Shown here: positions 1 through 46,808 of the stretch, piece by piece
Layout: every line of letters starts with the position of its first letter
How positions within the stretch are numbered: position 1 is the stretch's first letter
DNA from: Euprymna scolopes
Lineage: Eukaryota
DNA: 64,000 nt
Strand: one strand, 5' to 3'
NCBI GenBank assembly: GCA_053919585.1
Contig: CM132813.1
Notes under the pieces: generated by a model
Databases searched by the model: none
Seen by the model: the letters and a program-made list of their open reading frames with translations, nothing else
Told to the model about the DNA's origin: nothing
Translations under genes and position numbers: made by a program

Positions 1-3000
1 TACAATGCTACATCCATGACCATCATACCATCACACCATACAATGCTACATCCATGACCATCAGATCATCACACCATACAATGCTACATCCATGACCATC
101 ATACCATCACACCATACAATGCTACATCCATGACCATCATACCATCACACCATACAATGCTACATCCATGACCATCAGATCATCACACCATACAATGCTA
201 CATCCATGACCATCAGATCATCACACCATACAATGCTATCTCCATGACCATCAGATCATCACACCATACAATGCTACATCCATGACCATCATACCATCAC
301 ACCATACAATGCTACATCCATGACCATCAGATCATCACACCATACAATGCTACATCCATGACCATCATACCATCACACCATACAATGCTACATCCATGAC
401 CATCATACCATCACACCATACAATGCTACATCCATGACCATCAGATCATCACACCATACAATGCTACATCCATGACCATCATACCATCACACCATACAAT
501 GCTACATCCATGACCATCATACCATCACACCATACAATGCTACATCCATGACCATCAGATCATCACACCATACAATGCTACATCCATGACCATCAGATCA
601 TCACACCATACAATGCTACATCCATGACCATCATACCATCACACCATACAATGCTACATCCATGACCATCATACCATCACACCATACAATGCTACATCCA
701 TGACCATCAGATCATCACACCATACAATGCTACATCCATGACCATCATACCATCACACCATACAATGCTACATCCATGACCATCATACCATCACACCATA
801 CAATGCTACATCCATGACCATCAGATCATCACACCATACAATGCTACATCCATGACCATCAGATCATCACACCATACAATGCTACATCCATGACCATCAT
901 ACCATCACACCATACAATGCTACATCCATGACCATCAGATCATCACACCATACAATGCTACATCCATGACCATCAGATCATCACACCATACAATGCTACA
1001 TCCATGACCATCAGATCATCACACCATACAATGCTACATCCATGACCATCATACCATCACACCATACAATGCTACATCCATGACCATCAGATCATCACAC
1101 CATACAATGCTACATCCATGACCATCATACCATCACACCATACAATGCTACATCCATGACCATCATACCATCACACCATACAATGCTACATCCATGACCA
1201 TCAGATCATCACACCATACAATGCTACATCCATGACCATCAGATCATCACACCATACAATGCTACATCCATGACCATCATACCATCACACCATACAATGC
1301 TACATCCATGACCATCAGATCATCACACCATACAATGCTACATCCATGACCATCAGATCATCACACCATACAATGCTACATCCATGACCATCAGATCATC
1401 ACACCATACAATGCTACATCCATGACCATCAGATCATCACACCATACAATGCTACATCCATGACCATCAGATCATCACACCATACAATGCTACATCCATG
1501 ACCATCATACCATCACACCATACAATGCTACATCCATGACCATCATACCATCACACCATACAATGCTACATCCATGACCATCAGATCATCACACCATACA
1601 ATGCTACATCCATGACCATCAGATCATCACACCATACAATGCTACATCCATGACAATCAGATCATCACACCATACAATGCTACATCCATGACCATCATAC
1701 CATCACACCATACAATGCTACATCCATGACCATCAGATCATCACACCATACAATGCTACATCCATGACCATCAGATCATCACACCATACAATGCTACATC
1801 CATGACCATCAGATCATCACACCATACAATGCTACATCCATGACCATCAGATCATCACACCATACAATGCTACATCCATGACCATCAGATCATCACACCA
1901 TACAATGCTACATCCATGACCATCAGATCATCACACCATACAATGCTACATCCATGACCATCAGATCATCACACCATACAATGCTACATCCATGACCATC
2001 ATACCATCACACCATACAATGCTACATCCATGACCATCAGATGATCACACCATACAATGCTACATCCATGACCATCAGATCATCACACCATACAATGCTA
2101 CATCCATGACCATCAGATCATCACACCATACAATGCTACATCCATGACCATCAGATCATCACACCATACAATGCTACATCCATGACCATCAGATCATCAC
2201 ACCATACAATGCTACATCCATGACCATCAGATCATCACACCATACAATGCTACATCCATGACCATCAGATCATCACACCATACAATGCTACATCCATGAC
2301 CATCAGATCATCACACCATACAATGCTACATCCATGACCATCAGATCATCACACCATACAATGCTACATCCATGACCATCAAATCATCACACCATACAAT
2401 GCTACATCCATGACCATCATACCATCACACCATACAATGCTACGTCCATGACCATCAGATCATCACACCATACAATGCTACATCCATGACCATCAGATCA
2501 TCACACCATACAATGCTACATCCATGACCATCAGATCATCACACCATACAATGCTACATCCATGACCATCAGATCATCACATCATACAATGCTACATCCA
2601 TGACCATCAGATCATCACACCATACAATGCTACATCCATGACCATCATACCATCACACCATACAATGCTACATCCATGACCATCAGATCATCACACCATA
2701 CAATGCTACATCCATGACCATCAGATCATCACACCATACAATGCTACATCCATGACCATCATACCATCACACCATACAATGCTACATCCATGACCATCAT
2801 ACTATCACACCATACAATGCTACATCCATGACCATCAGATCATCACACCATACAATGCTACATCCATGACCATCAGATCATCACACCATACAATGCTACA
2901 TCCATGACCATCATACCATCACACCATACAATGCTACATCCATGACCATCAGATCATCACACCATACAATGCTACATCCATGACCATCAGATCATCACAC

Positions 3001-6000
3001 CATACAATGCTACATCCATGACCATCATACCATCACACCATACAATGCTACATCCATGACCATCAGATCATCACACCATACAATGCTACATCCATGACCA
3101 TCATACCATCACACCATACAATGCTACATCCATGACCATCATACCATCACACCATACAATGCTACATCCATGACCATCAGATCATCACACCATACAATGC
3201 TACATCCATGACCATCAGATCATCACACCATACAATGCTACATCCATGACCATCATACCATCACACCATACAATGCTACATCCATGACCATCAGATCATC
3301 ACACCATACAATGCTACATCCATGACCATCATACCATCACACCATACAATGCTACATCCATGACCATCATACCATCACACCATACAATGCTACATCCATG
3401 ACCATCAGATCATCACACCATACAATGCTACATCCATGACCATCAGATCATCACACCATACAATGCTACATCCATGACCATCATACCATCACACCATACA
3501 ATGCTACATCCATGACCATCAGATCATCACACCATACAATGCTACATCCATGACCATCAGATCATCACACCATACAATGCTACATCCATGACCATCAGAT
3601 CATCACACCATACAATGCTACATCCATGACCATCAGATCATCACACCATACAATGCTACATCCATGACCATCAGATCATCACACCATACAATGCTACATC
3701 CATGACCATCATACCATCACACCATACAATGCTACATCCATGACCATCATACCATCACACCATACAATGCTACATCCATGACCATCAGATCATCACACCA
3801 TACAATGCTACATCCATGACCATCAGATCATCACACCATACAATGCTACATCCATGACCATCAGATCATCACACCATACAATGCTACATCCATGACCATC
3901 ATACCATCACACCATACAATGCTACATCCATGACCATCAGATCATCACACCATACAATGCTACATCCATGACCATCAGATCATCACACCATACAATGCTA
4001 CATCCATGACCATCAGATCATCACACCATACAATGCTACATCCATGACCATCAGATCATCACACCATACAATGCTACATCCATGACCATCAGATCATCAC
4101 ACCATACAATGCTACATCCATGACCATCAGATCATCACACCATACAATGCTACATCCATGACCATCATACCATCACACCATACAATGCTACATCCATGAC
4201 CATCATACCATCACACCATACAATGCTACATCCATGACCATCAGATCATCACACCATCCAATGCTACATCCATGACCATCAGATCATCACACCATACAAT
4301 GCTACATCCATGACCATCATACCATCACACCATACAATGCTACATCCATGACCATCATACCATCACACCATACAATGCTACATCCATGACCATCAGATCA
4401 TCACACCATACAATGCTACATCCATGACCATCAGATCATCACACCATACAATGCTACATCCATGACCATCAGATCATCACACCATACAATGCTACATCCA
4501 TGACCATCAGATCATCACACCATACAATGCTACATCCATGACCATCAGATCATCACACCATACAATGCTACATCCATGACCATCAGATCATCACACCATA
4601 CAATGCTACATCCATGACCATCATACCATCACACCATACAATGCTACATCCATGACCATCAGATCATCACACCATACAATGCTACATCCATGACCATAAT
4701 ACATTCACACCATACAATGCTACATCCATGACCATCAGATCATCACACCATACAATGCTACATCCATGACCATCATACCATCACACCATACAATGCTACA
4801 TCCATGACCATCATACCATCACACCATACAATGCTACATCCATGACCATCAGATCATCACACCATACAATGCTACATCCATGACCATCAGATCATCACAC
4901 CATACAATGCTACATCCATGACCATCAGATCATCACACCATACAATGCTACATCCATGACCATCATACCATCACACCATACAATGCTACATCCATGACCA
5001 TCATACCATCACACCATACAATGCTACATCCATGACCATCAGATCATCACACCATACAATGCTACATCCATGACCATCATACCATCACACCATACAATGC
5101 TACATCCATGACCATCATACCATCACACCATACAATGCTACATCCATGACCATCAGATCATCACACCATACAATGCTACATCCATGACCATCATACCATC
5201 ACACCATACAATGCTACATCCATGACCATCATACCATCACACCATACAATGCTACATCCATGACCATCAGATCATCACACCATACAATGCTACATCCATG
5301 ACCATCATACCATCACACCATACAATGCTACATCCATGACCATCATACTATCACACCATACAATGCTACATCCATGACCATCAGATCATCACACCATACA
5401 ATGCTACATCCATGACCATCAGATCATCACACCATACAATGCTACATCCATGACCATCAGATCATCACACCATACAATGCTACATCCATGACCATCATAC
5501 CATCACACCATACAATGCTACATCCATGACCATCAGATCATCACACCATACAATGCTACATCCATGACCATCATACCATCACACCATACAATGCTACATC
5601 CATGACCATCAGATCATCACACCATACAATGCTACATCCATGACCATCATACCATCACACCATACAATGCTACATCCATGACCATCAGATCATCACACCA
5701 TACAATGCTACATCCATGACCATCAGATCATCACACCATACAATGCTACATCCATGACCATCATACCATCACACCATACAATGCTACATCCATGACCATC
5801 ATACCATCACACCATACAATGCTACATCCATGACCATCAGATCATCACACCATACAATGCTACATCCATGACCATCAGATCATCACACCATACAATGCTA
5901 CATCCATGACCATCATACCATCACACCATACAATGCTACATCCATGACCATCAGATCATCACACCATACAATGCTACATCCATGACCATCAGATCATCAC

Positions 6001-9000
6001 ACCATACAATGCTACATCCATGACCATCATACCATCACACCATACAATGCTACATCCATGACCATCAGATCATCACACCATACAATGCTACATCCATGAC
6101 CATCATACCATCACACCATACAATGCTACATCCATGACCATCATACCATCACACCATACAATGCTACATCCATGACCATCAGATCATCACACCATACAAT
6201 GCTACATCCATGACCATCATACCATCACACCATACAATGCTACATCCATGACCATCATACCATCACACCATACAATGCTACATCCATGACCATCAGATCA
6301 TCACACCATACAATGCTACATCCATGACCATCAGATCATCACACCATACAATGCTACATCCATGACCATCAGATCATCACACCATACAATGCTACATCCA
6401 TGACCATCATACCATCACACCATACAATGCTACATCCATGACCATCAGATCATCACACCATACAATGCTACATCCATGACCATCATACCATCACACCATA
6501 CAATGCTACATCCATGACCATCAGATCATCACACCATACAATGCTACATCCATGACCATCATACCATCACACCATACAATGCTACATCCATGACCATCAT
6601 ACCATCACACCATACAATGCTACATCCATGACCATCAGATCATCACACCATACAATGCTACATCCATGACCATCAGATCATCACACCATACAATGCTACA
6701 TCCATGACCATCATACCATCACACCATACAATGCTACATCCATGACCATCATACCATCACACCATACAATGCTACATCCATGACCATCAGATCATCACAC
6801 CATACAATGCTACATCCATGACCATCAGATCATCACACCATACAATGCTACATCCATGACCATCATACCATCACACCATACAATGCTACATCCATGACCA
6901 TCAGATCATCACACCATACAATGCTACATCCATGACCATCAGATCATCACACCATACAATGCTACATCCATGACCATCATACCATCACACCATACAATGC
7001 TACATCCATGACCATCAGATCATCACACCATACAATGCTACATCCATGACCATCATACCATCACACCATACAATGCTACATCCATGACCATCATACCATC
7101 ACACCATACAATGCTACATCCATGACCATCAGATCATCACACCATACAATGCTACATCCATGACCATCAGATCATCACACCATACAATGCTACATCCATG
7201 ACCATCATACCATCACACCATACAATGCTACATCCATGACCATCAGATCATCACACCATACAATGCTACATCCATGACCATCAGATCATCACACCATACA
7301 ATGCTACATCCATGACCATCATACCATCACACCATACAATGCTACATCCATGACCATCATACCATCACACCATACAATGCTACATCCATGACCATCAGAT
7401 CATCACACCATACAATGCTACATCCATGACCATCAGATCATCACACCATACAATGCTACATCCATGACCATCATACCATCACACCATACAATGCTACATC
7501 CATGACCATCATACCATCACACCATACAATGCTACATCCATGACCATCAGATCATCACACCATACAATGCTACATCCATGACCATCAGATCATCACACCA
7601 TACAATGCTACATCCATGACCATCATACCATCACACCATACAATGCTACATCCATGACCATCAGATCATCACACCATACAATGCTACATCCATGACCATC
7701 AGATCATCACACCATACAATGCTACATCCATGACCATCATACCATCACACCATACAATGCTACATCCATGACCATCAGATCATCACACCATACAATGCTA
7801 CATCCATGACCATCATACCATCACACCATACAATGCTACATCCATGACCATCAGATCATCACACCATACAATGCTACATCCATGACCATCAGATCATCAC
7901 ACCATACAATGCTACATCCATGACCATCATACCATCACACCATACAATGCTACATCCATGACCATCAGATCATCATACCATACAATGCTACATCCATGAC
8001 CATCATACCATCACACCATACAATGCTACATCCATGACCATCATACCATCACACCATACAATGCTACATCCATGACCATCAGATCATCACACCATACAAT
8101 GCTACATCCATGACCATCATACCATCACACCATACAATGCTACATCCATGACCATCATACCATCACACCATACAATGCTACATCCATGACCATCAGATCA
8201 TCACACCATACAATGCTACATCCATGACCATCAGATCATCACACCATACAATGCTACATCCATGACCATCAGATCATCACACCATACAATGCTACATCCA
8301 TGACCATCATACCATCACACCATACAATGCTACATCCATGACCATCAGATCATCACACCATACAATGCTACATCCATGACCATCATACCATCACACCATA
8401 CAATGCTACATCCATGACCATCAGATCATCACACCATACAATGCTACATCCATGACCATCATACCATCACACCATACAATGCTACATCCATGACCATCAT
8501 ACCATCACACCATACAATGCTACATCCATGACCATCAGATCATCACACCATACAATGCTACATCCATGACCATCAGATCATCACACCATACAATGCTACA
8601 TCCATGACCATCATACCATCACACCATACAATGCTACATCCATGACCATCATACCATCACACCATACAATGCTACATCCATGACCATCAGATCATCACAC
8701 CATACAATGCTACATCCATGACCATCAGATCATCACACCATACAATGCTACATCCATGACCATCATACCATCACACCATACAATGCTACATCCATGACCA
8801 TCAGATCATCACACCATACAATGCTACATCCATGACCATCAGATCATCACACCATACAATGCTACATCCATGACCATCATACCATCACACCATACAATGC
8901 TACATCCATGACCATCAGATCATCACACCATACAATGCTACATCCATGACCATCATACCATCACACCATACAATGCTACATCCATGACCATCATACCATC

Positions 9001-12000
9001 ACACCATACAATGCTACATCCATGACCATCAGATCATCACACCATACAATGCTACATCCATGACCATCAGATCATCACACCATACAATGCTACATCCATG
9101 ACCATCATACCATCACACCATACAATGCTACATCCATGACCATCAGATCATCACACCATACAATGCTACATCCATGACCATCAGATCATCACACCATACA
9201 ATGCTACATCCATGACCATCATACCATCACACCATACAATGCTACATCCATGACCATCATACCATCACACCATACAATGCTACATCCATGACCATCAGAT
9301 CATCACACCATACAATGCTACATCCATGACCATCAGATCATCACACCATACAATGCTACATCCATGACCATCATACCATCACACCATACAATGCTACATC
9401 CATGACCATCATACCATCACACCATACAATGCTACATCCATGACCATCAGATCATCACACCATACAATGCTACATCCATGACCATCAGATCATCACACCA
9501 TACAATGCTACATCCATGACCATCATACCATCACACCATACAATGCTACATCCATGACCATCAGATCATCACACCATACAATGCTACATCCATGACCATC
9601 AGATCATCACACCATACAATGCTACATCCATGACCATCATACCATCACACCATACAATGCTACATCCATGACCATCAGATCATCACACCATACAATGCTA
9701 CATCCATGACCATCATACCATCACACCATACAATGCTACATCCATGACCATCAGATCATCACACCATACAATGCTACATCCATGACCATCATACCATCAC
9801 ACCATACAATGCTACATCCATGACCATCATACCATCACACCATACAATGCTACATCCATGACCATCAGATCATCACACCATACAATGCTACATCCATGAC
9901 CATCAGATCATCACACCATACAATGCTACATCCATGACCATCATACCATCACACCATACAATGCTACATCCATGACCATCATACCATCACACCATACAAT
10001 GCTACATCCATGACCATCAGATCATCACACCATACAATGCTACATCCATGACCATCAGATCATCACACCATACAATGCTACATCCATGACCATCATACCA
10101 TCACACCATACAATGCTACATCCATGACCATCAGATCATCACACCATACAATGCTACATCCATGACCATCATACCATCACACCATACAATGCTACATCCA
10201 TGACCATCAGATCATCACACCATACAATGCTACATCCATGACCATCAGATCATCACACCATACAATGCTACATCCATGACCATCAGATCATCACACCATA
10301 CAATGCTACATCCATGACCATCATACCATCACACCATACAATGCTACATCCATGACCATCATACCATCACACCATACAATGCTACATCCATGACCATCAG
10401 ATCATCACACCATACAATGCTACATCCATGACCATCAGATCATCACACCATACAATGCTACATCCATGACCATCAGATCATCACACCATACAATGCTACA
10501 TCCATGACCATCAGATCATCACACCATACAATGCTACATCCATGACCATCAGATCATCACACCATACAATGCTACATCCATGACCATCAGATCATCACAC
10601 CATACAATGCTACATCCATGACCATCAGATCATCACACCATACAATGCTACATCCATGACCATCATACCATCACACCATACAATGCTACATCCATGACCA
10701 TCAGATCATCACACCATACAATGCTACATCCATGACCATCATACCATCACACCATACAATGCTACATCCATGACCATCAGATCATCACACCATACAATGC
10801 TACATCCATGACCATCAGATCATCACACCATACAATGCTACATCCATGACCATCAGATCATCACACCATACAATGCTACATCCATGACCATCATACCATC
10901 ACACCATACAATGCTACATCCATGACCATCAGATCATCACACCATACAATGCTACATCCATGACCATCAGATCATCACACCATACAATGCTACATCCATG
11001 ACCATCAGATCATCACACCATACAATGCTACATCCATGACCATCAGATCATCACACCATACAATGCTACATCCATGACCATCAGATCATCACACCATACA
11101 ATGCTACATCCATGACCATCATACCATCACACCATACAATGCTACATCCATGACCATCAGATCATCACACCATACAATGCTACATCCATGACCATCATAC
11201 CATCACACCATACAATGCTACATCCATGACCATCATACCATCACACCATACAATGCTACATCCATGACCATCAGATCATCACACCATACAATGCTACATC
11301 CATGACCATCAGATCATCACACCATACAATGCTACATCAATGACCATCAGATCATCACACCATACAATGCTACATCCATGACCATCAGATCATCACACCA
11401 TACAATGCTACATCCATGACCATCAGATCATCACACCATACAATGCTACATCCATGACCATCAGATCATCACACCATACAATGCTACATCCATGACCATC
11501 AGATCATCACACCATACAATGCTACATCCATGACCATCATACCATCACACCATACAATGCTACATCCATGACCATCAGATCATCACACCATACAATGCTA
11601 CATCCATGACCATCAGATCATCACACCATACAATGCTACATCCATGACCATCATACCATCACACCATACAATGCTACATCCATGACCATCAGATCATCAC
11701 ACCATACAATGCTACATCCATGACCATCAGATCATCACACCATACAATGCTACATCCATGACCATCATACCATCACACCATACAATGCTACATCCATGAC
11801 CATCAGATCATCACACCATACAATGCTACATCCATGACCATCAGATCATCACACCATACAATGCTACATCCATGACCATCAGATCATCACACCATACAAT
11901 GCTACATCCATGACCATCAGATCATCACACCATACAATGCTACATCCATGACCATCAGATCATCACACCATACAATGCTACATCCATGACCATCATACCA

Positions 12001-15000
12001 TCACACCATACAATGCTACATCCATGACCATCAGATCATCACACCATACAATGCTACATCCATGACCATCATACCATCACACCATACAATGCTACATCCA
12101 TGACCATCAGATCATCACACCATACAATGCTACATCCATGACCATCAGATCATCACACCATACAATGCTACATCCATGACCATCAGATCATCACACCATA
12201 CAATGCTACATCCATGACCATCATACCATCACACCATACAATGCTACATCCATGACCATCAGATCATCACACCATACAATGCTACATCCATGACCATCAT
12301 ACCATCACACCATACAATGCTACATCCATGACCATCAGATCATCACACCATACAATGCTACATCCATGACCATCATACCATCACACCATACAATGCTACA
12401 TCCATGACCATCAGATCATCACACCATACAATGCTACATCCATGACCATCATACCATCACACCATACAATGCTACATCCATGACCATCAGATCATCACAC
12501 CATACAATGCTACATCCATGACCATCAGATCATCACACCATACAATGCTACATCCATGACCATCAGATCATCACACCATACAATGCTACATCCATGACCA
12601 TCATACCATCACACCATACAATGCTACATCCATGACCATCAGATCATCACACCATACAATGCTACATCCATGACCATCATACCATCACACCATACAATGC
12701 TACATCCATGACCATCAGATCATCACACCATACAATGCTACATCCATGACCATCATACCATCACACCATACAATGCTACATCCATGACCATCAGATCATC
12801 ACACCATACAATGCTACATCCATGACCATCATACCATCACACCATACAATGCTACATCCATGACCATCAGATCATCACACCATACAATGCTACATCCATG
12901 ACCATCAGATCATCACACCATACAATGCTACATCCATGACCATCAGATCATCACACCATACAATGCTACATCCATGACCATCATACCATCACACCATACA
13001 ATGCTACATCCATGACCATCAGATCATCACACCATACAATGCTACATCCATGACCATCATACCATCACACCATACAATGCTACATCCATGACCATCAGAT
13101 CATCACACCATACAATGCTACATCCATGACCATCATACCATCACACCATACAATGCTACATCCATGACCATCAGATCATCACACCATACAATGCTACATC
13201 CATGACCATCATACCATCACACCATACAATGCTACATCCATGACCATCAGATCATCACACCATACAATGCTACATCCATGACCATCAGATCATCACACCA
13301 TACAATGCTACATCCATGACCATCAGATCATCACACCATACAATGCTACATCCATGACCATCATACCATCACACCATACAATGCTACATCCATGACCATC
13401 AGATCATCACACCATACAATGCTACATCCATGACCATCATACCATCACACCATACAATGCTACATCCATGACCATCAGATCATCACACCATACAATGCTA
13501 CATCCATGACCATCATACCATCACACCATACAATGCTACATCCATGACCATCAGATCATCACACCATACAATGCTACATCCATGACCATCATACCATCAC
13601 ACCATACAATGCTACATCCATGACCATCAGATCATCACACCATACAATGCTACATCCATGACCATCAGATCATCACACCATACAATGCTACATCCATGAC
13701 CATCAGATCATCACACCATACAATGCTACATCCATGACCATCATACCATCACACCATACAATGCTACATCCATGACCATCAGATCATCACACCATACAAT
13801 GCTACATCCATGACCATCATACCATCACACCATACAATGCTACATCCATGACCATCAGATCATCACACCATACAATGCTACATCCATGACCATCATACCA
13901 TCACACCATACAATGCTACATCCATGACCATCAGATCATCACACCATACAATGCTACATCCATGACCATCATACCATCACACCATACAATGCTACATCCA
14001 TGACCATCAGATCATCACACCATACAATGCTACATCCATGACCATCAGATCATCACACCATACAATGCTACATCCATGACCATCAGATCATCACACCATA
14101 CAATGCTACATCCATGACCATCATACCATCACACCATACAATGCTACATCCATGACCATCAGATCATCACACCATACAATGCTACATCCATGACCATCAT
14201 ACCATCACACCATACAATGCTACATCCATGACCATCAGATCATCACACCATACAATGCTACATCCATGACCATCATACCATCACACCATACAATGCTACA
14301 TCCATGACCATCAGATCATCACACCATACAATGCTACATCCATGACCATCATACCATCACACCATACAATGCTACATCCATGACCATCAGATCATCACAC
14401 CATACAATGCTACATCCATGACCATCAGATCATCACACCATACAATGCTACATCCATGACCATCAGATCATCACACCATACAATGCTACATCCATGACCA
14501 TCATACCATCACACCATACAATGCTACATCCATGACCATCAGATCATCACACCATACAATGCTACATCCATGACCATCATACCATCACACCATACAATGC
14601 TACATCCATGACCATCAGATCATCACACCATACAATGCTACATCCATGACCATCAGATCATCACACCATACAATGCTACATCCATGACCATCATACCATC
14701 ACACCATACAATGCTACATCCATGACCATCAGATCATCACACCATACAATGCTACATCCATGACCATCATACCATCACACCATACAATGCTACATCCATG
14801 ACCATCAGATCATCACACCATACAATGCTACATCCATGACCATCATACCATCACACCATACAATGCTACATCCATGACCATCAGATCATCACACCATACA
14901 ATGCTACATCCATGACCATCAGATCATCACACCATACAATGCTACATCCATGACCATCAGATCATCACACCATACAATGCTACATCCATGACCATCAGAT

Positions 15001-16804
15001 CATCACACCATACAATGCTACATCCATGACCATCAGATCATCACACCATACAATGCTACATCCATGACCATCATACCATCACACCATACAATGCTACATC
15101 CATGACCATCAGATCATCACACCATACAATGCTACATCCATGACCATCAGATCATCACACCATACAATGCTACATCCATGACCATCAGATCATCACACCA
15201 TACAATGCTACATCCATGACCATCAGATCATCACACCATACAATGCTACATCCATGACCATCAGATCATCACACCATACAATGCTACATCCATGACCATC
15301 ATACCATCACACCATACAATGCTACATCCATGACCATCAGATCATCACACCATACAATGCTACATCCATGACCATCATACCATCACACCATACAATGCTA
15401 CATCCATGACCATCAGATCATCACACCATACAATGCTACATCCATGACCATCAGATCATCACACCATACAATGCTACATCCATGACCATCAGATCATCAC
15501 ACCATACAATGCTACATCCATGACCATCAGATCATCACACCATACAATGCTACATCCATGACCATCAGATCATCACACCATACAATGCTACATCCATGAC
15601 CATCAGATCATCACACCATACAATGCTACATCCATGACCATCATACCATCACACCATACAATGCTACATCCATGACCATCAGATCATCACACCATACAAT
15701 GCTACATCCATGACCATCAGATCATCACACCATACAATGCTACATCCATGACCATCAGATCATCACACCATACAATGCTACATCCATGACCATCAGATCA
15801 TCACACCATACAATGCTACATCCATGACCATCAGATCATCACACCATACAATGCTACATCCATGACCATCAGATCATCACACCATACAATGCTACATCCA
15901 TGACCATCAGATCATCACACCATACAATGCTACATCCATGACCATCAGATCATCACACCATACAATGCTACATCCATGACCATCAGATCATCACACCATA
16001 CAATGCTACATCCATGACCATCATACCATCACACCATACAATGCTACATCCATGACCATCAGATCATCACACCATACAATGCTACATCCATGACCATCAG
16101 ATCATCACACCATACAATGCTACATCCATGACCATCAGATCATCACACCATACAATGCTACATCCATGACCATCAGATCATCACACCATACAATGCTACA
16201 TCCATGACCATCATACCATCACACCATACAATGCTACATCCATGACCATCAGATCATCACACCATACAATGCTACATCCATGACCATCAGATCATCACAC
16301 CATACAATGCTACATCCATGACCATCAGATCATCACACCATACAATGCTACATCCATGACCATCAGATCATCACACCATACAATGCTACATCCATGACCA
16401 TCAGATCATCACACCATACAATGCTACATCCATGACCATCAGATCATCACACCATACAATGCTACATCCATGACCATCATACCATCACACCATACAATGC
16501 TACATCCATGACCATCAGATCATCACACCATACAATGCTACATCCATGACCATCAGATCATCACACCATACAATGCTACATCCATGACCATCAGATCATC
16601 ACACCATACAATGCTACATCCATGACCATCAGATCATCACACCATACAATGCTACATCCATGACCATCATACCATCACACCATACAATGCTACATCCATG
16701 ACCATCAGATCATCACACCATACAATGCTACATCCATGACCATCAGATCATCACACCATACAATGCTACATCCATGACCATCAGATCATCACACCATACA
16801 ATGC
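1..16804. repeat. 38-bp tandem satellite, about 442 units, open at the window's left edge; unit TACAATGCTACATCCATGACCATCA[TAC|GAT]CATCACACCA
   Basis: Period 38 is kept with no net indel: lines 1141, 2281 ... 15961 (multiples of 1140 = 30x38) all start in the same phase. Two variants differ at unit positions 26 and 28, with only sporadic other substitutions. The array ends at ...CAATGC 16804. Confidence 0.99.
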
Positions 16805-17620
16805 CTTTTTCTAATTTGAGAACATAATTTTTTCCTCAAATCTGGTCTCTCTGTAGAACCTCTTCCACAACTCCTTGTAACACACTGTCTCACTATTCAC
16901 CATATCTTCCCAATCAGTTCCTTTTGCTATTTTAAATAACTGCAGGTTGTTCTAAGCCATCCAGATATCGGGTAGTAGCCAACAGGTAGAAAACATTTCA
17001 TGCCGTCTCATTTCATCATGTATCTTTGACAGGTCTTTTCATGAAGAGCATTCTTTCTGTACTGTGTGTATTAAGCAGGAGACCTAACACTGTTTTTACA
17101 TTCCATGACTCTGGTGGTTTTGCCGTGAGGCTAAACTTGACAAGATGACATACAAGTTCCACTGCTGACACGTCTATTTCATTGATCAGAATGTCATCTA
17201 CATACGAATCTGTGTTATTTCTGATGAGGTCCTTTTTACTGAGCACAGTTTTCAAAATTTTTGCCATGACTTTTGGGCCAACATTTAATCTAAACCCCAA
17301 ACTCGTCAGACAATAGGTCAGTCCTTCATACGGAACCAATTGGAACTTCCAGAAATGTCTTGTAACATGAATTTGTAAATATATGCATGTCAAATTCACA
17401 ACCTTTGTCGCCTTCCTCCACGTCTTCATAGTTTCTCCATAGACATCAATTGTGTTTCAACCAGAGTGACACATGATATATTTATTTAGTTCTGGTCTTT
17501 GTTCCTCGTGGGTTGTATCACTACCATTATGGGAAGCACTCCTATTTTTACATCTTGATCCCAAGATACTCGGGTCTTTTCTGCAAGCCATTGTTTCACG
17601 CTGAAGTCCTTGTCCACCAC
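16805..17620 (-). mobile_element. Decayed LTR-retrotransposon (Ty3/gypsy-like) pol fragment: RT, connection and start of RNase H
   Basis: ORF 17016-17429 has RT motifs (YLQIHV, LGFRLNVGPKVM, SYVDDILI, VLGL). Upstream frames read GVLPIMVVIQPTRNK and ELNKYIMCH. Downstream frames read GYYPISGWLRTTCSYLK* and LQGVVEEVLQRDQI*GKNYVLKLEKGIVWCD. Stops and frameshifts are present; no LTR was seen. Confidence 0.88.
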
Positions 17621-18005
17621 ATCACATTAGATTTGAATGTCACGGTTATTTTTTAATAAAATAAAAATGGGATGAATAATTGTAGTGGTTGTGATTCATA
17701 TTCATAAAGACATTAAAGGATTTCAATTAGATAACCACACATTCTGCATTTTGAAAATATGGTGCCTTTTTTTTTTATCCAATCGATATCTTTATAACTC
17801 AGATTTCCAATAATATCATTTGTGTGAGCTATCATCACTGTAACCCTTTTTTCTAATATTCAAAACCATTATTTATTTACTGTTTTGATTGCATATTCCT
17901 CAAAAATGAAAGGGCCAAAAAGCAAATCTTGAGTCGTTTCATTTAAAAACACAATCGGCTTTTGTATTTTCTTCATTTTCTTTAGATCTTTTTTCTTTAT
18001 TTCAG

Positions 18006-18100
18006 GGTTATCTGGAATATTTGGATAAATGTGAGGAAGTTTCGAAAGATCAAATAACAATTTTATTTGGAAATATTGTTCAGATTTATGCATTCAGTCA
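18006..18100 (+). CDS. PLEKHG1: RhoGEF exon (DH domain): [31 protein letters not shown](Q)
   Basis: tttcAG acceptor and GTAAGT donor at 18101; 95 nt, phase 0 to 2; LFGNI motif of DH domains. Confidence 0.92.
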
Positions 18101-18331
18101 GTAAGTACTTTTTCAATTATGTGTTATTTTAGCTAATTTATTGGCATTGATTGAGAGATTTGTCTTGTTGTGACTGATGGAATCAGCTATGATGTGTTCA
18201 AATCGAATTTTGCTAATTATCATACTTTAAAATGGCACAAGTAGACAAATAAAAATGCTACATGAAAAAATTATAGATGAAACTCTCCCAATGACTTTAT
18301 CAAAAAATATAAAAGGAAAACAAAATTTTAA

Positions 18332-18365
<34 letters not shown>

Positions 18366-21300
18366 TTATAAAAAATTAACTCTAATTTTGTTTAAATTCA
18401 CTCCTGAATTTATTTATGATTGTCCCTCATACAACTAACAACTAGTATCTTCAGGTTCTTGACTGAGGTTGCTTGAGAAAACAGTTGTGAATCCTACTAC
18501 ATGATTTGTGCCATTTTTTTATATTTATCCACTTGTGCCATTTTTACCATGCCTATATTACTATGCGGTGTTAAAATCATACTATTTCATGTTTATTTCA
18601 GCATAATGCTGTTGAGAAAAGTATGAACTAACAATTCCACTCAAGAAAGCAACTTGATTCATTGTATATGTCAATCGAACACGTTCGCAATAAATATTAT
18701 TTTATCATTAAACAACCCTAAAAGGACTTATCTGGCATTACACACACTGTTAAACCATTTAACATTGTTTTTTACCTGTCTTTTGAAACATATGTAAGTC
18801 ATTCTAATGAAATACTCATTGCCACCGAAAATATTGGGATTTTTACATTGAAAAACAACAACAAAAATAATCCAATTATAATCCAACCAATTAAAATTGA
18901 TATACAGGTCTTTTGAAAAGTCATGTTGAAACTACATTTTCATTCTAATAAGAAAGTTCTTTACTTTATTGATAATTTTATATAAAAAATCTGACAAGAA
19001 ACCAAATTGGTTATGGATTTGAAACACCAGTTCTCATTGGATCACCAAGTTAAGCAATATTAATGCTGGTCAGCATTAGATACTCTAGATCTATTCCCCC
19101 CCCTCCCCAAAATAGTAGGTTAGACTACATCAAGGCCTTGATAGGACAATTCGCCTAGAAGGGTGAGAACTTTGCAATAGTACTAATCATTCTATGCTTA
19201 ACCAAGCATTACCTTATTGTCCTTTTGTAATACTAATTGTTGACTTGATTACTGCCTTCCCTCAGGGTTTAATCATGGGTCCAACTCCCTGGTCTGCATC
19301 AATGATCGACCAAATCATATTCTTAGATCATTCGTAAACATTTATGCTGACAACACCACAATCTATGGCAACACTTCCAAGACCAGCAATGACTGATATC
19401 TTTCTGATCTTGAGCACGTTGTGCATTGGGGAAAAAGGTGACTGGTTAATTTTAATGCATCTAAAACCAAGCTTATCTCTTCTCATCATAATCATTCTGA
19501 ACTCTATCTGCCCCAATTAAAATGAATGGGGAAGCACCATGTCTTAACAAGTTTTCAGACTGACCTTCACTCCTGAAACAGAACACATACATCAAATCTG
19601 TTGCCAAGATCGATGGAAAAATGGTTGGATCATTCTACCACTCCAGTAGGTGTCTCACTGCCGCTGCAATCCTCTTTGCCACAAGAGCTGTTCAGCCTCT
19701 CATGCCTTAATAGCTCACTGAAACCTCGTAGATGATGCACTTTTTCCCTTGCAGCCTCTTTCCCACAGAGACATTGTGAGTCTGTCTCTGTTCTATCGTT
19801 ATTTTCATGGCAAGTGCTCGTCTGAACTCTAATCTTGCCAAACTTTCACAAAAACACTCAACTAGCTACAACCACTATCAATAATCTTTCCCCTCTCTCA
19901 CTGTGCCTAAATCTAAACTCAGATTCTACAAACACAGCTTCTTCCCCAGAACTGCCCACCTGTGGAACACTGTTCCATTGGTCTGCTTCCCAGCCGACTA
20001 CAGAATGGTAGCCTTCAAGTCTGGTGTAAAAAGTTCTTGCTGAACCGCCTCCTTAAATAATCATATTGTACCCAATTTAAATAATCATATTGTACCCAAT
20101 TTAAATAATCATATTGTACCCAATTTAAATAATCATATTGTACCCAATTTAAATAATCATATTGTACCCAATTTAAATAATCATATTGTACCCAATTTAA
20201 ATAATCATATTGTACCCAATTTAAATAATCATATTGTACCCAATTTAAATAATCATATTGTACCCAATTTAAATAATCATATTGTACCCAATTTAAATAA
20301 TCATATTGTACCCAATTTAAATAATCATATTGTACCCAATTTAAATAATCATATTGTACCCAATTTAAATAATCATATTGTACCCAATTTAAATAATCAT
20401 ATTGTACCCAATTTAAATAATCATATTGTACCCAATTTAAATAATCATATTGTACCTAAGTAACGATTACTACACTACCACCTAACATTCATTAACCCTT
20501 ATCCTTGAGTGGCCTTCATGCCTTGATAAATGGTGACTCTTGTAAAAAAAATCGTTTTTGAAAGTTTACTTGTCAACAGGAAAGCACACCGCATAAATCA
20601 TCTTGCAATGCAACTATGTAATGCTAAAGTAACATTATTAATTGAATTCTTATGAAACCATAGCAACGTTTTTTGTGGCTTCTTTAATGACCAAACAATT
20701 TCTATTGTAAACGATTAATCAAAGACACTTTTATTTTAACAAATAATTGATGAGATGGTTGGTGGAAGAGAGGGTATCATACTTTTTTAAAAGTATAAAT
20801 CTGTGTGTGTGCATGTGTGTCCAGCTATGGGTGAAATAGTAGGGATATAATATTAGGACATAATATTAGGACATAAGTTCGAGGCATAATATGATGGCAT
20901 CATTAAAGGGGTGCAATATTAGGATAGAGTTAATTAGAGCATAATTAAGGAAAAACATTGGCGATTATAGATAACATTTCTAGATGAATCCCATAAACTA
21001 AAAAATGTATCAACATTACTTTTGAAGGAAGCTTAAAAACGTCCATTAAAAAAAAAAACATCAATAAATCATGAAAATAAATGTTAATTTGTTTATCATA
21101 ATTAATATAGTGTTGATTTTCTTTAATTTTATGCATCATTTATGTTTATTTCAAAGCTGCTGTTTAAAAGAATTTGAATAAAAACCACATTTCAAATTGC
21201 TTAAAATACTAGAAAAACCTAAAATCTTATAAATATCAAGATTTGATGTAAATAATATTGATGTAAAAAAAATATTGAATATTTTAAAATTTGAAAAAAA

Positions 21301-24300
21301 ATTAATAAAATAAGAATATCTACCAAATGTTTTAATTTTGTCATTTTTTTTTATTTCAAAGATTTTGTAATCTAATTAAATTATTTTATATTTTAAATGG
21401 TTAATGTATTCAAATATTTCAAAGTGAACCATAAATCGATTGCTGCTAGATGTTGAAATTTCTTTGAGAAGAAATGTCAGAACATATTAAAAATTTAATT
21501 ATTTCCAATAAAAAAAAAATGAATTGCATGAAGACTATGCAGAAATTTCAGATAAGATGTTTGAAAGAATTTTATCTTACTGAAGGTTATACGGATTAAA
21601 GAAAAAGGAGAAAGCAAAATTTAAAAAATTGTATAACAACTTTTTATATTCAAATGAGATTATGCATGTTTTTTGTTTGTTTATTTATTTGTAGTTTTAA
21701 TTTAAGCGTTTTTCCCCAATATGCCCAAGAAAGAATAAATACATAATAAAAAAATAAAAAAAATGGGTTATCTTAAAGTAAAATGATTTTGACAATTTTG
21801 TCTTAAGGTTGTTGATATTTCATAAAAACAAATGAAATGATTCATAAAAATAATTGCGTGTAATGCAACAAAATTATTCCCAGTTATTATCTGTTAATTT
21901 TCATTATCTTCTACTCTTTAAGGTTTTATCTTTGTTTTAAATAACTTGAAGCTTGGAATTAAATTTTAATATTTAACACAAGTTAAAATCTTTACATATT
22001 TCAATGTATTTTTCAATCAAATCAAACCCTTTTATTTTTTTTAGAAGAATCTGTCCCAGGTAAAATAACTTCACCTTTATGAAGATTAAAATCAAGATAT
22101 AATGATACTTTGTCTAGATTCTTTCGATTCTATAAAATGTCTAAAATTTAAGGATTGAAGAATTTTATTGGTGTCAAATTTAATACAAATTTGAAACCTT
22201 TGAATTTTTAAATCGAAAGTTATACGAATAACCTTTTAAAATGTTCTAAAAAAAAAAAAATTGAAATTTGGAAAATGTTTATTGTGTTGTCTAAGCCTAT
22301 TGTTAAAATTTCACAAACACCAGAAATGTCTCAATTTTTGCAAAAGACTTCCATACTCCCTTTGCCGTCTTTTAATAAAACTAAATAAAGCTAAATATAA
22401 CCCACATCATCTATCCTTATACCTAGAAGCTGTGCTCTAAAATTCATAATAATCGGTTAATTAATGTAGAAGTGAATCCTGTATATAGAACTACACAAAC
22501 ATGCCTAACCTTGTGTAGAAAGAAATTTATAACATCTTCTTTTCCTTTCTTTTTCTTTCCTCTTTTCCTTCTCTTTTTTTCTTTTACGAACACTGTTTCA
22601 TTATTCATACTTGTCTGAAATACCTTGACTGTTGTACCCACCCACATTCTTTAGGTGGCTTTTGTCATAGTAACATTCTTGAACTTTCAAACTGAACGTG
22701 TTATTTAATCAACTGATGCCAACTACTATTATTTAGTGATCCATACGTTTTAGTTATCTCGTATCAGTTAATTGTGTCTTCAGTTCTTTCATCAAAGATT
22801 GAACTCGCAACCTCTTGTTATCTGAAGAAGATCAGAGAGTGCAACATCTGAGATGTGATAAACATGACCATAACCAAGACGAGTGTAACAACGTAAAACC
22901 TGTAATGAATGGCAACACTTTGGCTAAGACTAAAGTGGAAGAGAAATCTTTCTAGAGTGAGCCAATCTTAAGTTTTGTATCACTGTAGAGTGCCCCATTT
23001 TGGGGAGCTACGTTTTCCCAACATTGAAAACCGACATGTGTCTAATTCTGCTCTCGTGAGAAATTAAGTAAATACAAGCAATATCTCTTCTCTGGAAAAT
23101 CGTCAGTGTTTCTGTTTGTTTCTCATGACTTCCTCAAAAATTTTAGTTTCCTCAACGTTAGCATTTTTATCTTTGTGAATGTCAGCTAATATACCTTATC
23201 ATGCTATGTCCTATTCATTTTATTATAACATACCTTAGTAATTAACATGTTATCTCAGATTCATTTTATCTTCAGCTCATTCATCCAAGATGAGGGACAA
23301 CACTGTAAAATATGTAATTGAACCACAATAATTTGGCTATGTTAAAATAAAACGGAAATCTTTCTAGATTGAGGCAATCTTAATTTTTGTACAAATTTAG
23401 AGTAACCCATTTTAGGGAGATAAATTTTCCCAACATTAAAGACTGACCTCGTGTTTAACTCTTCTGTCTTATAAGAAGGCAAGTAAATATCTCATCCCTG
23501 CAAAATCATTAAACGATGTTTCTGTTTTAATTTTACATCAAAATTCCACATTTTATTTTACTCAACGTTTGATTGTTAGTATTTTTATCTTTGCAGAATA
23601 ACAGGGCTTTATGTATTCATCAGGGCTTTATGTATTAAATGAAAAATGTTTTTTTGATTAGATTTTGGAAGTGGATCCTGGAAAATTTTCAAGTATGCAA
23701 ACATAAACCTTGTCTTGAACCTTGCAATGAAAGTCGAATTAAGTTGAAAATCCTGCATCCAAAAACATTAGATTTTTTTTAGAGAAAACCCAGATCATTT
23801 AACCTTTCTTTGCATGAACTATATAGAATTGCTTTGCACAAATATTTTTATTTGTAAGAAAATGATCTCTGAGTTTTCAATAATTGTTGATTGCCCATTA
23901 ATTTTGAGAATAACACCCAAGCTGCAACTTGAGAAAAGAGGCATATCAGCATCATCAGAGCATCTACAAAGAAGGAACACAACCACAATGTTGGATAACA
24001 GGCGGTCAGCGAATGTGTTAAAGGTATTGCCACACAAACTTGAGGTTGTGTGCATTGTATGTGCTCTGGGCATCAGAGCAGTATTTTCCAGTGACCAGTG
24101 GGTGTTTAGTTACATTTTGAAGGGTTCATTATTAGACAAAGTTTAAAGTGTAACTTAGAGAACTTAGAGTTGGTACACATCTTCTTGCCTGTGTGGCCGT
24201 GTGCACGACCTGCACATAGAGGGATTACAGTGATGCAAGATGGTGTGCATAACGCCCTTGCTATCTATTTTACAGAAGGAAAAGGTCTAAAGTGTAAATA

Positions 24301-27300
24301 TCGAGTAATTGTTGCTTTCATACTGAATAACTGACATTCACTGGAAGCTTTTTTTTCCCGTTTTTATTCGTTTTCCACTTCAAAAATCTATTTGTTTTAC
24401 AGGAAATTTTTACAAGAACTGGAATTATGTGAAGGAGATCCTTTAAAAGTTGCTGAATGTTTTGTAAAAAATAAAGATAAATTTGTAATTTATGGCGACT
24501 ACTGTACCAACTACCCAAGGTGAGTGATTATTTAAAAATTTCTGAAAAAAAAAAATACTCAACAGATAATGTCAAAGTTGCCCCTTCCCTCAAGTTTTTT
24601 TTTATCAGAAAACTCCTATCTGAAAAGTATCATCGAGCAAATTATCACTGTGGATGGAAAGATTCTTCTTAGTCTTGCTTCATTTTCACCAATCGATCAT
24701 CTAGTGGCTGTGGATTAATGCTGGGTGTTGAAAACTCTAGAAGCCTTGCTCTGCAGTTTGCTTTGACGAATCATTTTTAAGAACACATCTTTTTATATCT
24801 ACTTTTACTCATTTGCCATTGAGTTTACTTATTTTATACTTCCTTTTCTTTCATTCACATGTTTTTGCCACACTTGACCTTCTGACTTTGCTAGACAATC
24901 ATTTGTCCCACCTCTCCTTAAATGTCTCTAAGGACATTCAAACAGAAAGTTTCAACTAGCAAAAATACCCAGCCTTCAATATATACCTTTGAAGATGAAA
25001 AACAGTTTTATTTATAGCAATTCAAAAATTATAGATACTAACAGAACTTAGTATTTGGGATATTTTTTTTCTTTTTTATGAGCTCTGTGCAATTTATATT
25101 CTTTGAGTATGAGGCTGTTTTTTTTGTAAATATATAATTCATAGATTGAGATTGTCGGACTGACTTCCTCATCTTGGTTGTTATAGTCAGAATGTTTGGG
25201 CCGTTTTGCCCTCCGGCCTTCATCAGGTGTTTTGTATCGAACTGGGGAACCGTTTGTTAGGAGTCTCGAACCCAACTGTCACTGTGACATATGGCCGAGT
25301 GGTCCTAGACGTTGTATCAAAGTTTACAGTTACCCAAAGGTGTGGAGTTCAATCCTGAATGAAGGCAGTGAAAAGTAACATTCAAAACAGAGAATCAGCA
25401 ACTATGTCCCAAAGCCTAGCTGGAGTCCGAATACGGTACCCCCATAATAATAATAAAGGGTTGTGTTCGAGACTCCTAACAAATGGTTCCCCAGTTCGAT
25501 ACAAAACACCTGATGAAGGCTGGAGAGCAAAACGGCCGAAACGTTGTGACTATAACAACCAAGATGAGGAAGTCAGTCCGACAATCTCAATCAATGAAAA
25601 CACCTCATCTCAAAAATACAGACAATTACTATATAATTCATAGTTTCATTTCCCATTACTTGATTATAATTGTTTTTGTAACATGTCTCTTGTCAGTCAT
25701 TATTTTTTTGTCTTGTAAAAATATTTGACGGTAAGGTCAAAATTTTTAACAAAAATGAAGGTGCACTGACATTAAAAGTTTTATGAAAAATACAAAAAAA
25801 CCTGTATTTATCAGTTTACCCTGTAGAAAAGTGCCCAGTTGAGGGTGAAGCAATTTTTATGTTTTCTCTAAAAATGCCCCAAATTTCTGAAAAACAAAAA
25901 TTAAATGTAATTATAACAAAACAATCTTTATTTTAGATATGCATTTGTTTTTTTTTTGTTTTTTTGTTAATCAGTGCTTCGTTATATGGTAAATTTTTCC
26001 AAATTAATTTATTAACTGAAACATTTTTGTTATTTAATTAAAAAATTTGGTCATATCAATAGTCAAGTTATTTGTCAACTGAAAACAAAACCTTTTTGAA
26101 ATGAATAACAACTTATTAAATATCTTTACATTTATATTCAGTAAAAATGTCAACAAAGTTTATTCCCTGAATGATCTGATTTTTATGTTATGGACAGCGC
26201 TTTAGGGGGTTATTTATGATGAATAATTTTATACAAGCATATCATATACATGTAGAAAACTATCGTTAATTCAGTGTTCTTTTCGTGCAAAATAGAAGCT
26301 TCTTAATTCAAATTTGTAAATTTGAATTTTGCATATTTTTATTTTTGGATGAATCCATTCTCTGTAAAGAATAATGCATTTTTGAAATTGTTATGCAGGT
26401 AAGAATTTTGTTTTATCTGTTAAAACTAAAAACTTTTTCCTCTTAAATTATAAAATAAGAATATATTTTCTCATTTATTTTGTATCATACGTTGAGTCAA
26501 TTATTTCTTATGAATTGAATGATTTCATCTTAGTTCAACCATTTTCAATCCATTATTTATCCTTTGTTCTTGAATTTATTTGCATTCAATATGGCTTCAG
26601 TGATTTTGATGCACAACATGTTATCTTTCTTTACTGTCTACAATAATTTGCAGCTATTAATTCTAGTCTGCATATATATTATTAAAATTATTTTATCAAG
26701 ATTTTTTTTTCTAATATTTTAGTGCCTTGGAAACCTTAACCAAATGTATGGCTCATCCAAACTTGGCCGATATTTTTAAACAGCGCCAACTCGTTCTGGG
26801 ACATAATCTTCCACTCGGTGCCTATCTATTGAAACCAGTTCAACGGGTTCTTAAATACCATCTACTTCTTCAGGTAAGCTATTGATTATTTTAGTTTTAT
26901 GCAAATTTTAACTTGTACTAACACAAATAAAATTCTAATTTTGAAAAGTTAGAAATAACTTGAGCCAAATAAGAATTAAGTTAATAATTTTCAACTGACA
27001 TGTTAGAGCACACATTGGTGCTGCATAATTTGGAAATAATTTTTACAACATGTGCATGTTGTTCAATGCTACTCTTTGAATAAATCTGACAAAGAAAGTC
27101 AGTTTGATTCTCGAGTTCAGATGTACATAAAATTTCATTTGAAAATCGATATTTGGTCATATTTCGTTTTCTTCCATCATGTTCTTTGCAACAAATTAAT
27201 GTATTTCAATTCGGTTCCTTTAAAAATCTGTTTTGGATAAGAATATTGTTACAATAGAGACTTTTTCACTCATGATTCAAGTGGCTGTTGCTATTAAAAA

Positions 27301-46767: not shown

Positions 46768-46808
<41 letters not shown>

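What the first reader, a model, noticed from the sequence alone, without database searches (positions are those of the whole stretch)
16760..16900. A satellite of at least 16.8 kb apparently born from the RNase H active-site motif of an adjacent LTR retrotransposon
Seen: on the - strand the pol relic reads LQGVVEEVLQRDQI*GKNYVLKLEKG and crosses the junction at 16804 in frame into the satellite as I-V-W-C-D-D-L-M-V-M-D-V-A-L. The 38-bp unit is bracketed by a 6-bp direct repeat GCATTG (gGC ATT Gta = G-I-V; gta GCA TTG = V-A-L). Known: gypsy-type RNase H domains start with a (W/T)CDAS...G.(A/V)L strand carrying the first catalytic Asp, directly after RT and the connection. Inference: a microhomology-primed duplication of this 38-bp coding segment seeded the array, so the parent sequence, breakpoint and likely mechanism of satellite birth are all preserved at one junction.
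Basis: partly seen in the sequence, partly recalled or inferred. Interest (0 to 1): 0.88.

Follow-up and report, generated by a model that had tools for sequence, protein, structure and literature searches.

The report
Satellite born inside dead retroelement gene
About 497 copies of a 38-base unit (18.9 kb), found at only one place in this 5.9-Gb mollusc genome, grew out of a short piece of the RNase H-coding part of a long-dead retroelement, and the parent gene is still readable on both sides, so it shows cleanly how a satellite starts.

Summary
The 38-nt array runs past the window start and is 18,882 nt long (about 497 units; C31:50527923-50546804). It lies inside one decayed pol gene on the minus strand, not beside it. 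RT and the first RNase H codons lie at window 17635-16788. The rest of RNase H and integrase-like sequence resume, colinear with other copies, directly after the far end.

Other genomic copies (70-79% identical) read KLEKG-IVWCDASS...IDGVIVEDAAWL at this point. The unit consists of the first 18 nt of that 77-nt stretch plus its last 20 nt. An in-frame 39-nt gap between two TGATG repeats separates the two pieces. The array ends with an extra GCAT, and the parental stretch is bracketed by GCATTG and GCATGG.

The unit occurs nowhere else in the assembly: all 494 matches are in this array. Independent short-read runs contain it, including one from a second species label.

Corrections: the unit is not one contiguous parental segment, the RNase H is not gypsy-type by Pfam, and no LTRs were found.

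This is a new, very clean member of a known kind (transposon-derived satellite seeded by microhomology duplication). Unchecked notes from this scan report similar cases elsewhere in the same genome.

The parts
1..16804 (.). Window part of the 38-nt satellite array. The whole array is C31:50527923-50546804 (window coordinates -2077 to 16804): 18,882 nt, about 497 units. There are two main unit variants, A (307 units) and B (175 units), which differ at two linked positions.
   Evidence: TRF; k-mer density over fetched upstream loci; boundary read; unit parsing.
16767..16804 (-). First unit in pol sense (variant A). It reads in frame from the pol relic as I-V-W-C-D-D-L-M-V-M-D-V-A.
16787..16804 (-). 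The 18 nt of the unit that are identical to the family's pol sequence (codons G-I-V-W-C-D, including the probable first catalytic Asp of RNase H). Other pol copies align up to this point and diverge beyond it.
   Evidence: contigs and reads of other copies lie on 16787-16825 and then run on unlike the window.
16805..17635 (-). Decayed pol relic upstream of the array: RT (YVDDILI near 17190), the connection, and the start of RNase H. It has many stops and is about 70-79% identical to at least 49 other genomic copies.
   Evidence: Translation; genome search; tblastn with RT and RNase H pieces of other copies, 17635-16882 and 16886-16788.
16804..16805 (.). Pol-upstream junction of relic and array. 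The other junction is outside the window at L031:7922/7923 (window -2078/-2077). There the array ends ...GTAGCAT and pol resumes as the family's GCATGG-CTAAG... continuation.
   Evidence: An independent contig in run X1 covers 16793-17098 with 1 mismatch.

Best explanation
A locus-specific satellite arose in place from coding sequence of a dead retroelement.

The host is one old, decayed copy of a PR-RT-RNase H-integrase-like retroelement on the minus strand. In the parental state, the first beta-strand region of RNase H (KLEKG-IVWCDASSMATGVCVEIDGVIVEDAAWL in other copies) held a 77-nt stretch bracketed by GCATTG and GCATGG.

Step 1 (inferred). A 39-nt, 13-codon deletion between two TGATG repeats brought the two GCAT words 38 nt apart.

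Step 2 (inferred). Slippage, template switching or unequal exchange on the GCAT microhomology duplicated that 38-nt segment.

Step 3 (inferred). Unequal exchange or replication slippage expanded and homogenised the array to about 500 units. This produced two linked variants and local higher-order patterns.

The result is (38 nt)n plus a terminal GCAT, nested between colinear halves of pol. The array is most likely a neutral by-product. That the RNase H catalytic-Asp codon lies in the unit is incidental.
For: Shown:
- Array limits and size: 18,882 nt, 497 units.
- Both flanks belong to one pol copy and are colinear with paralogues. In L002 the upstream flank ends at 2333 and the downstream flank resumes so that about 77-81 nt of family sequence are replaced. 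tblastn places RT and the RNase H N-terminus on the right, and the RNase H C-terminus and integrase-like pieces on the left.
- Unit = family positions 1-18 (18/18 against L016) plus positions 58-77 (14-15/20), with a single 39-41-nt gap. Its ends fall in TGATG repeats. The shuffle test gave 0/2000 for 7 of 8 copies.
- Paralogues carry GCATTG at position 1 and GCATGG at position 78, and the array ends with an extra GCAT before pol resumes.
- The unit and the deletion-junction 24-mer occur only in this array in the 5.9-Gb assembly: 494 and 493 hits, one strand, none elsewhere.
- The array has only 13 singleton variant units, while the flanks are about 27% diverged from relatives and full of stops.
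- The array is real in independent data. X1 unitigs have depth about 2000 and about 1000 against 15 for the flank, with a contig crossing the junction. Raw reads show unit-to-unit joints. A second species label holds the A unit.
- RNase H identity: the L022 piece hits RVT_3 at 4e-6 (above cutoff) and RNase_H at 2.5e-3.
Against: - The pre-array sequence of this particular copy cannot be seen, so the parental state is inferred from paralogues only 70-79% identical.
- The second half of the unit matches at only 14-15 of 20 positions.
- Which variant (A or B) is ancestral is ambiguous. A matches L026. B is closer to the majority of copies. The second species shows only A, and the far-end unit is B.
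- The order of deletion and first duplication is not proven.
- Short-read copy-number estimates disagree with the assembly: about 0.4x in X1 and about 2-2.5x in X5/X6. The latter are proximity-ligation-like libraries, and the A unit carries GATC.
- No LTRs were found within 13 kb on either side, and Pfam did not confirm the integrase, so the element's class is unresolved.
- Whether the array in organism B lies at the same locus was not shown.
Confidence: 0.85

Rival explanations
1. Same origin in place, but a different order of events. A 77-nt tandem duplication on GCAT came first. A 39-nt deletion then arose in one unit, and the 38-nt form replaced the 77-nt form through homogenisation.
For: Paralogues have GCATTG and GCATGG 77 nt apart, so the microhomology already existed at that spacing. 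Homogenisation is clearly strong in this array.
Against: No 77-nt unit or remnant survives at either edge, where old units usually persist. Both terminal units are ordinary 38-mers.
Confidence: 0.12
2. The deletion and the first duplication were made by reverse-transcriptase template switching on short repeats during the retrotransposition that created this copy. Only the later expansion was genomic.
For: RT template switching at short direct repeats is an established source of deletions and duplications in retroelements (general knowledge, not tested here). Other copies show independent deletions in the same stretch (L003, L021).
Against: No other copy carries the deletion junction. The array is far more homogeneous than expected if its seed were as old as the insertion. 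Nothing here distinguishes events before integration from events after it.
Confidence: 0.07
3. An unrelated satellite inserted into or expanded next to a pol relic, and the in-frame reading is coincidence.
For: In-frame reading of a 38-nt unit means little by itself.
Against: 18/18 identity of the unit start to the family sequence. The unit end matches the sequence just before the resumption point. The flanks are colinear. The unit is absent from the rest of the genome.
Confidence: 0.02
4. Assembly artefact: the array or its junctions were created by mis-assembly.
For: Satellite arrays are hard to assemble, and read-based copy numbers differ from the assembly.
Against: Independent runs from three studies hold the unit at high depth. 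X1 has a contig over 16793-17098. Raw reads show tandem joints. The A:B ratio in X1 (about 2:1) resembles the assembly's 1.75:1.
Confidence: 0.02

Closest known systems
Transposable-element-derived satellite DNAs (for example PisTR-A from the Ogre 3'UTR, Sobo from the Sore1 LTR, CRM1TR/CRM4TR; ORF-derived cases from LINE-1 ORF2, CR1 ORF2 and rye gag), as reviewed in PMC9659126 and PMC12628747
   Same: A tandem array whose monomer is homologous to an internal part of a retroelement, arising in a degenerate copy. The reviews propose microhomology-mediated repair followed by unequal recombination or slippage as the route.
   Different: According to the review, most documented cases come from LTRs, TIRs or UTRs that are already repetitive. 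The few ORF cases listed are ORF2 or gag, and none is RNase H. This array is confined to one locus. It still sits inside its parent copy with both breakpoints intact, and the unit is a deletion derivative of the parental stretch.
Microhomology-mediated tandem duplication (MTD), PMC13167724
   Same: A segment bracketed by a short direct repeat (GCAT) is duplicated head to tail. The product is n units plus one extra copy of the microhomology, which is what both array ends show.
   Different: MTDs are usually seen as single duplications. Here the duplication went on to about 500 copies. Genetic dependence (for example on a flap endonuclease) cannot be tested from sequence.
Locus-specific minisatellite and macrosatellite arrays with higher-order structure shaped by unequal crossing-over
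   Same: A single-locus array with two variants arranged in local repeating patterns (BBAA, and a 10-unit AAABABABAB pattern), very low private variation, and apparent copy-number differences between samples.
   Different: Unit origin and both breakpoints can be traced to a specific coding sequence, which is rarely possible.

Membership tests
TE-derived satellite DNA | Long head-to-tail array of a short monomer | tested here: met
   18,882 nt, about 497 units of 38 nt, 97% matches.
TE-derived satellite DNA | Monomer homologous to a defined part of a transposable element family | tested here: met
   Unit = family pol positions 1-18 and 58-77. Shuffle test 0/2000 for 7 of 8 copies.
TE-derived satellite DNA | Abundant, multi-locus or chromosome-scale distribution (classical satellite) | tested here: not met
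   All 494 matches lie in one array, none elsewhere in 5.9 Gb. It is a single-locus array, so 'satellite' applies only in the loose sense.
Microhomology-mediated tandem duplication | Parental segment bracketed by a short direct repeat, with the product ending in one extra copy of that repeat | tested here: met
   Paralogues have GCATTG and GCATGG at the two ends of the replaced stretch. The array ends ...GCAT, then pol resumes.
Microhomology-mediated tandem duplication | Pre-duplication allele with a single copy of the segment | not testable with these tools
   No related eukaryote assemblies are available. Short-read runs gave no bridging reads of an unexpanded allele.
RNase H domain (catalytic D-E-D-D core) | Significant match to an RNase H profile in the stretch that follows the array's parental segment | tested here: met
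   L022 piece: RVT_3 PF13456 at 4.1e-6 (27.1 bits, cutoff 21.6) and RNase_H PF00075 at 2.5e-3. L017 piece: 0.011 and 0.034.
RNase H domain (catalytic D-E-D-D core) | The Asp in C-D-A-S is the first catalytic Asp | tested here: inconclusive
   The Pfam alignments start about 28 residues after it. Extrapolating the offsets puts it at profile position about 8-10, where the DGS/DAS Asp is expected from my memory of the models. PDB sequence searches gave nothing.
Ty3/gypsy LTR retrotransposon | Gypsy-type RNase H (Pfam RT_RNaseH models) | tested here: not met
   No hit to these models at E<=1 on three RNase H pieces. The hits were RVT_3 and RNase_H.
Ty3/gypsy LTR retrotransposon | Pair of long terminal repeats | tested here: not met
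   blastn of 18 kb to the left against 13 kb to the right found only microsatellite and SINE-like matches. The copy is old and probably truncated at its 5' end, so this is weak evidence against.
Ty3/gypsy LTR retrotransposon | Gene order PR-RT-RNase H-IN | tested here: inconclusive
   Weak aspartic protease hits (about 1e-3) upstream of RT in L003. RVT_1 at 7e-4. RNase H met. Integrase-like pieces were seen by eye and by tblastn colinearity, but Pfam had no rve hit. The Atlas suggested DDE-type features only weakly.

The most novel reading that the evidence does not exclude
This locus may be one resolved example of a genome-wide, still active process in this mollusc lineage. In that process, microhomology-bracketed segments of ordinary single-copy DNA, including dead transposon ORFs, are repeatedly seeded and blown up into homogeneous arrays of 1-30 kb. 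Presence and copy number may differ between individuals and between two species labels. If so, rates of satellite birth and expansion could be measured directly.
Probability: 0.3. Interest if true: 0.7.

Novelty: new member of a known kind. Interest (0 to 1): 0.55.

Why it matters
Satellite DNAs are usually studied after they have spread and homogenised, when their parent sequence and the seeding event are lost. Here four things can all be read at one locus and checked against more than ten paralogous copies:
- the parent, a defined 77-nt stretch of RNase H-coding sequence;
- an intermediate, an in-frame 39-nt deletion between TGATG repeats;
- the duplication microhomology, GCAT;
- both array edges.

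This gives concrete support to the model of microhomology duplication followed by unequal exchange for satellite birth from transposon remains. It adds a pol/RNase H coding-sequence case to a list dominated by LTR, TIR and UTR origins. Because the array appears to vary between samples and occurs under a second species label, the locus could be used to time birth and expansion. It has no evident function, and the biology is not of a new kind.

Tried and rejected
- LTR search: blastn of the far-side 18 kb against window 16805-30000 gave only AT-microsatellite hits and one 64-nt SINE-like match.
- PDB sequence searches with RT and RNase H pieces gave no meaningful hits.
- Pfam on integrase-like and RNase H C-terminal pieces found no family.
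- The Atlas search of the RT piece said only 'RVT_1, mollusc-rich cluster'. For the integrase-like piece it gave weak DDE-transposase-like leads, not evidence.
- Other pol copies with the same 39-nt deletion but no amplification: none found.
- An unexpanded allele or bridging reads in short-read runs: coverage read was about 0.3x, so none were seen and nothing can be concluded.
- Unrelated satellite and assembly artefact were considered and rejected (see rivals).
- Comparison with individual copies answered the question.
- The first Pfam call failed because the chosen window frames contained stops.

Full report
WHAT IS THERE

TRF finds one array over window 1-16804, with periods that are multiples of 38 and 97% matches. 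At 16804/16805 the sequence changes to unique DNA. The window is C31:50530001-50594000 of a 5.9-Gb assembly. I fetched 100 kb upstream. There the array continues for another 2,077 nt and stops sharply at L031:7922/7923.

The whole array is 18,882 nt, about 497 units. It has 307 units of variant A and 175 of variant B, which differ at two linked positions. There are 13 singleton variant units and one 30-nt unit. Local higher-order patterns occur, such as BBAA and a 10-unit AAABABABAB block.

THE FLANKING GENE

On the minus strand, window 17635-16882 is a decayed reverse transcriptase with YVDDILI and many stops.

The genome holds at least 49 related stretches at 68-81% identity. All copies inspected are broken. 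Stop-free pieces of other copies give these Pfam results:
- RVT_1: 7e-4
- weak aspartic-protease hits upstream of RT
- RVT_3: 4e-6, above the cutoff, for the stretch just after the point where the array sits
- RNase_H: 2.5e-3 for the same stretch

No gypsy RT_RNaseH model was hit, and no LTR pair was found. The element is therefore a PR-RT-RNase H-integrase-like retroelement of unresolved superfamily. Run labels and the nearest Atlas cluster point to a mollusc.

THE DECISIVE COMPARISONS

1. In ten other copies, pol continues past the junction as G-I-V-W-C-D-A-S-S-M-A-T-G-V-C-V-E-I-D-G-V-I-V-E-D-A-A-W-L. The first 18 nt after the junction are the first 18 nt of the satellite unit: 18/18 in L016 and 17/18 in several others. 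Read data agree. Contigs and reads from other copies lie on 16787-16825 and then diverge into the family's normal continuation.

2. Read in pol sense, the sequence beyond the far end of the array is the family's continuation from ...GCATGG-CTAAG... onward. It stays colinear for more than 900 nt through the RNase H C-terminus and integrase-like region. This copy has an extra deletion of about 53 nt there, which removes the TDS motif.

3. The array therefore replaces a parental stretch of about 77 nt. MAFFT places the unit as parental positions 1-18 plus positions 58-77 (14-15 of 20 identical), with a single 39-41-nt gap. Local alignment puts the gap ends in a TGATG repeat present at both sides. 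The score exceeds all 2000 shuffles for 7 of 8 copies. The gap is 13 codons, so the frame is kept. The unit's D-D-L-M-V-M-D-V-A-L corresponds to L026's D-D-L-I-V-E-D-A-A-W.

4. In the paralogues the parental stretch begins with GCATTG and is followed by GCATGG. The array is n units plus a terminal GCAT. This is the expected product of a tandem duplication on that microhomology.

5. Genome-wide, the unit at 3 or fewer mismatches has 494 hits on one strand. All are inside this array. The 24-mer across the internal deletion has 493 hits, all on one strand, about the number of units in this array, and every listed hit lies in it.

IS IT REAL?

Run X1 (same species label, another study) has A-unit and B-unit unitigs at depth about 2000 and about 1000, against 15 for a single-copy contig. 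That contig covers 16793-17098 with one mismatch. Raw reads of two further samples show unit-to-unit joints.

Rough copy numbers differ from the assembly, about 0.4x in X1 and about 2-2.5x in X5/X6. They are of the same order. The X5/X6 libraries look proximity-ligated, and the A unit contains GATC, so this is not a clean measure.

One run labelled as a second species (X3) holds a pure A-variant unitig. Its depth corresponds to roughly 150-200 units at its coverage. Another run of that label and one of a third label hold none of the sampled words, which is not proof of absence.

MECHANISM

Shown:
- The array is nested in one pol copy.
- The flanks are colinear with paralogues.
- The unit is composite.
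- Microhomologies are present at the relevant places in paralogues.
- The unit is unique to this locus.
- The array is far more homogeneous than the relic is similar to its relatives.

Inferred:
- A 39-nt deletion between TGATG repeats came first. This order is favoured because neither edge keeps a 77-nt unit.
- A 38-nt duplication on GCAT followed.
- Unequal exchange or slippage then expanded and homogenised the array.

Which variant is ancestral is unresolved. That the catalytic-Asp codon is part of the unit is supported only by extrapolating Pfam offsets, and it has no mechanistic role.

COMPARISON WITH WHAT IS KNOWN

Reviews PMC9659126 and PMC12628747 document many transposon-derived satellites. 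They propose microhomology-mediated repair followed by non-allelic recombination or slippage as the route. Origins are mostly LTR, TIR or UTR, with a few ORF2 or gag cases and none from RNase H. Microhomology-mediated tandem duplication is described as a conserved mechanism (PMC13167724, abstract). This case is a new and unusually complete member of that kind, not a new kind.

EARLIER NOTES OF THIS SCAN

One note on the same array calls it a binary string of two linked variants with no length variants. That holds inside the window, but one 30-nt unit lies outside it. Three unchecked notes on other pieces of this genome claim satellites born from retrotransposon ORFs. I did not test them.

In this window, a 56-nt array of 16 identical copies is also unique to its locus. 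It ends in a partial unit, which fits a general tendency of this genome.

I built no consensus of the retroelement. All comparisons were with individual natural copies.

Noticed in passing
window 53378-54280: A 56-nt unit repeated 16 times with no differences. It is unique to this locus in the whole assembly (16 hits, all here). The array ends with a 7-nt partial unit (AATCTGT) before unique sequence, the same 'n units plus a short repeat' signature as the 38-nt array.
   Followed up: partly
window 20053-20456: A 24-nt unit repeated 16.8 times at 100% identity. It directly follows the C-terminal coding end of a non-LTR (LINE-like) ORF2 (the ...LWNS.P...FK..V motif, also seen in L011/L012). It is probably the LINE's 3' tandem-repeat tail.
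   Followed up: no
window 20490-20551 and window -3082 to -3019 (L031:6918-6981): A short SINE-like dispersed repeat, 83% identical between the two sides of the relic. The same element appears next to pol copies in L009, L011 and L021. It is not an LTR.
   Followed up: no
L008:2928-3626; L020:2057-2617: Other pol-family loci also have long tandem arrays within 1-2 kb (a 30-nt-period array in L008 and a roughly 39-nt-period array in L020). Their origin was not examined.
   Followed up: no
L031:7750-7800 region (window about -2157 to -2200): Relative to L002, this pol copy lacks about 53 nt just downstream of the array. The missing stretch includes the family's I-R-T-D-S motif (third catalytic Asp region of RNase H).
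   Followed up: partly
window 44971-46999: Several N blocks (masked or gaps, 2000 N in total together with 28778-29089) lie in an extremely AT-rich (GC about 15%) region of (TAA)n-like repeats.
   Followed up: no
runs X5 and X6 laid on window 16691-17100: Many reads run from the satellite into a palindromic sequence of about 30 nt centred on ATCGATCGAT. This looks like a proximity-ligation bridge or linker, so these 'genomic other' libraries are poor for copy-number estimates. The A unit contains GATC and the B unit does not.
   Followed up: no
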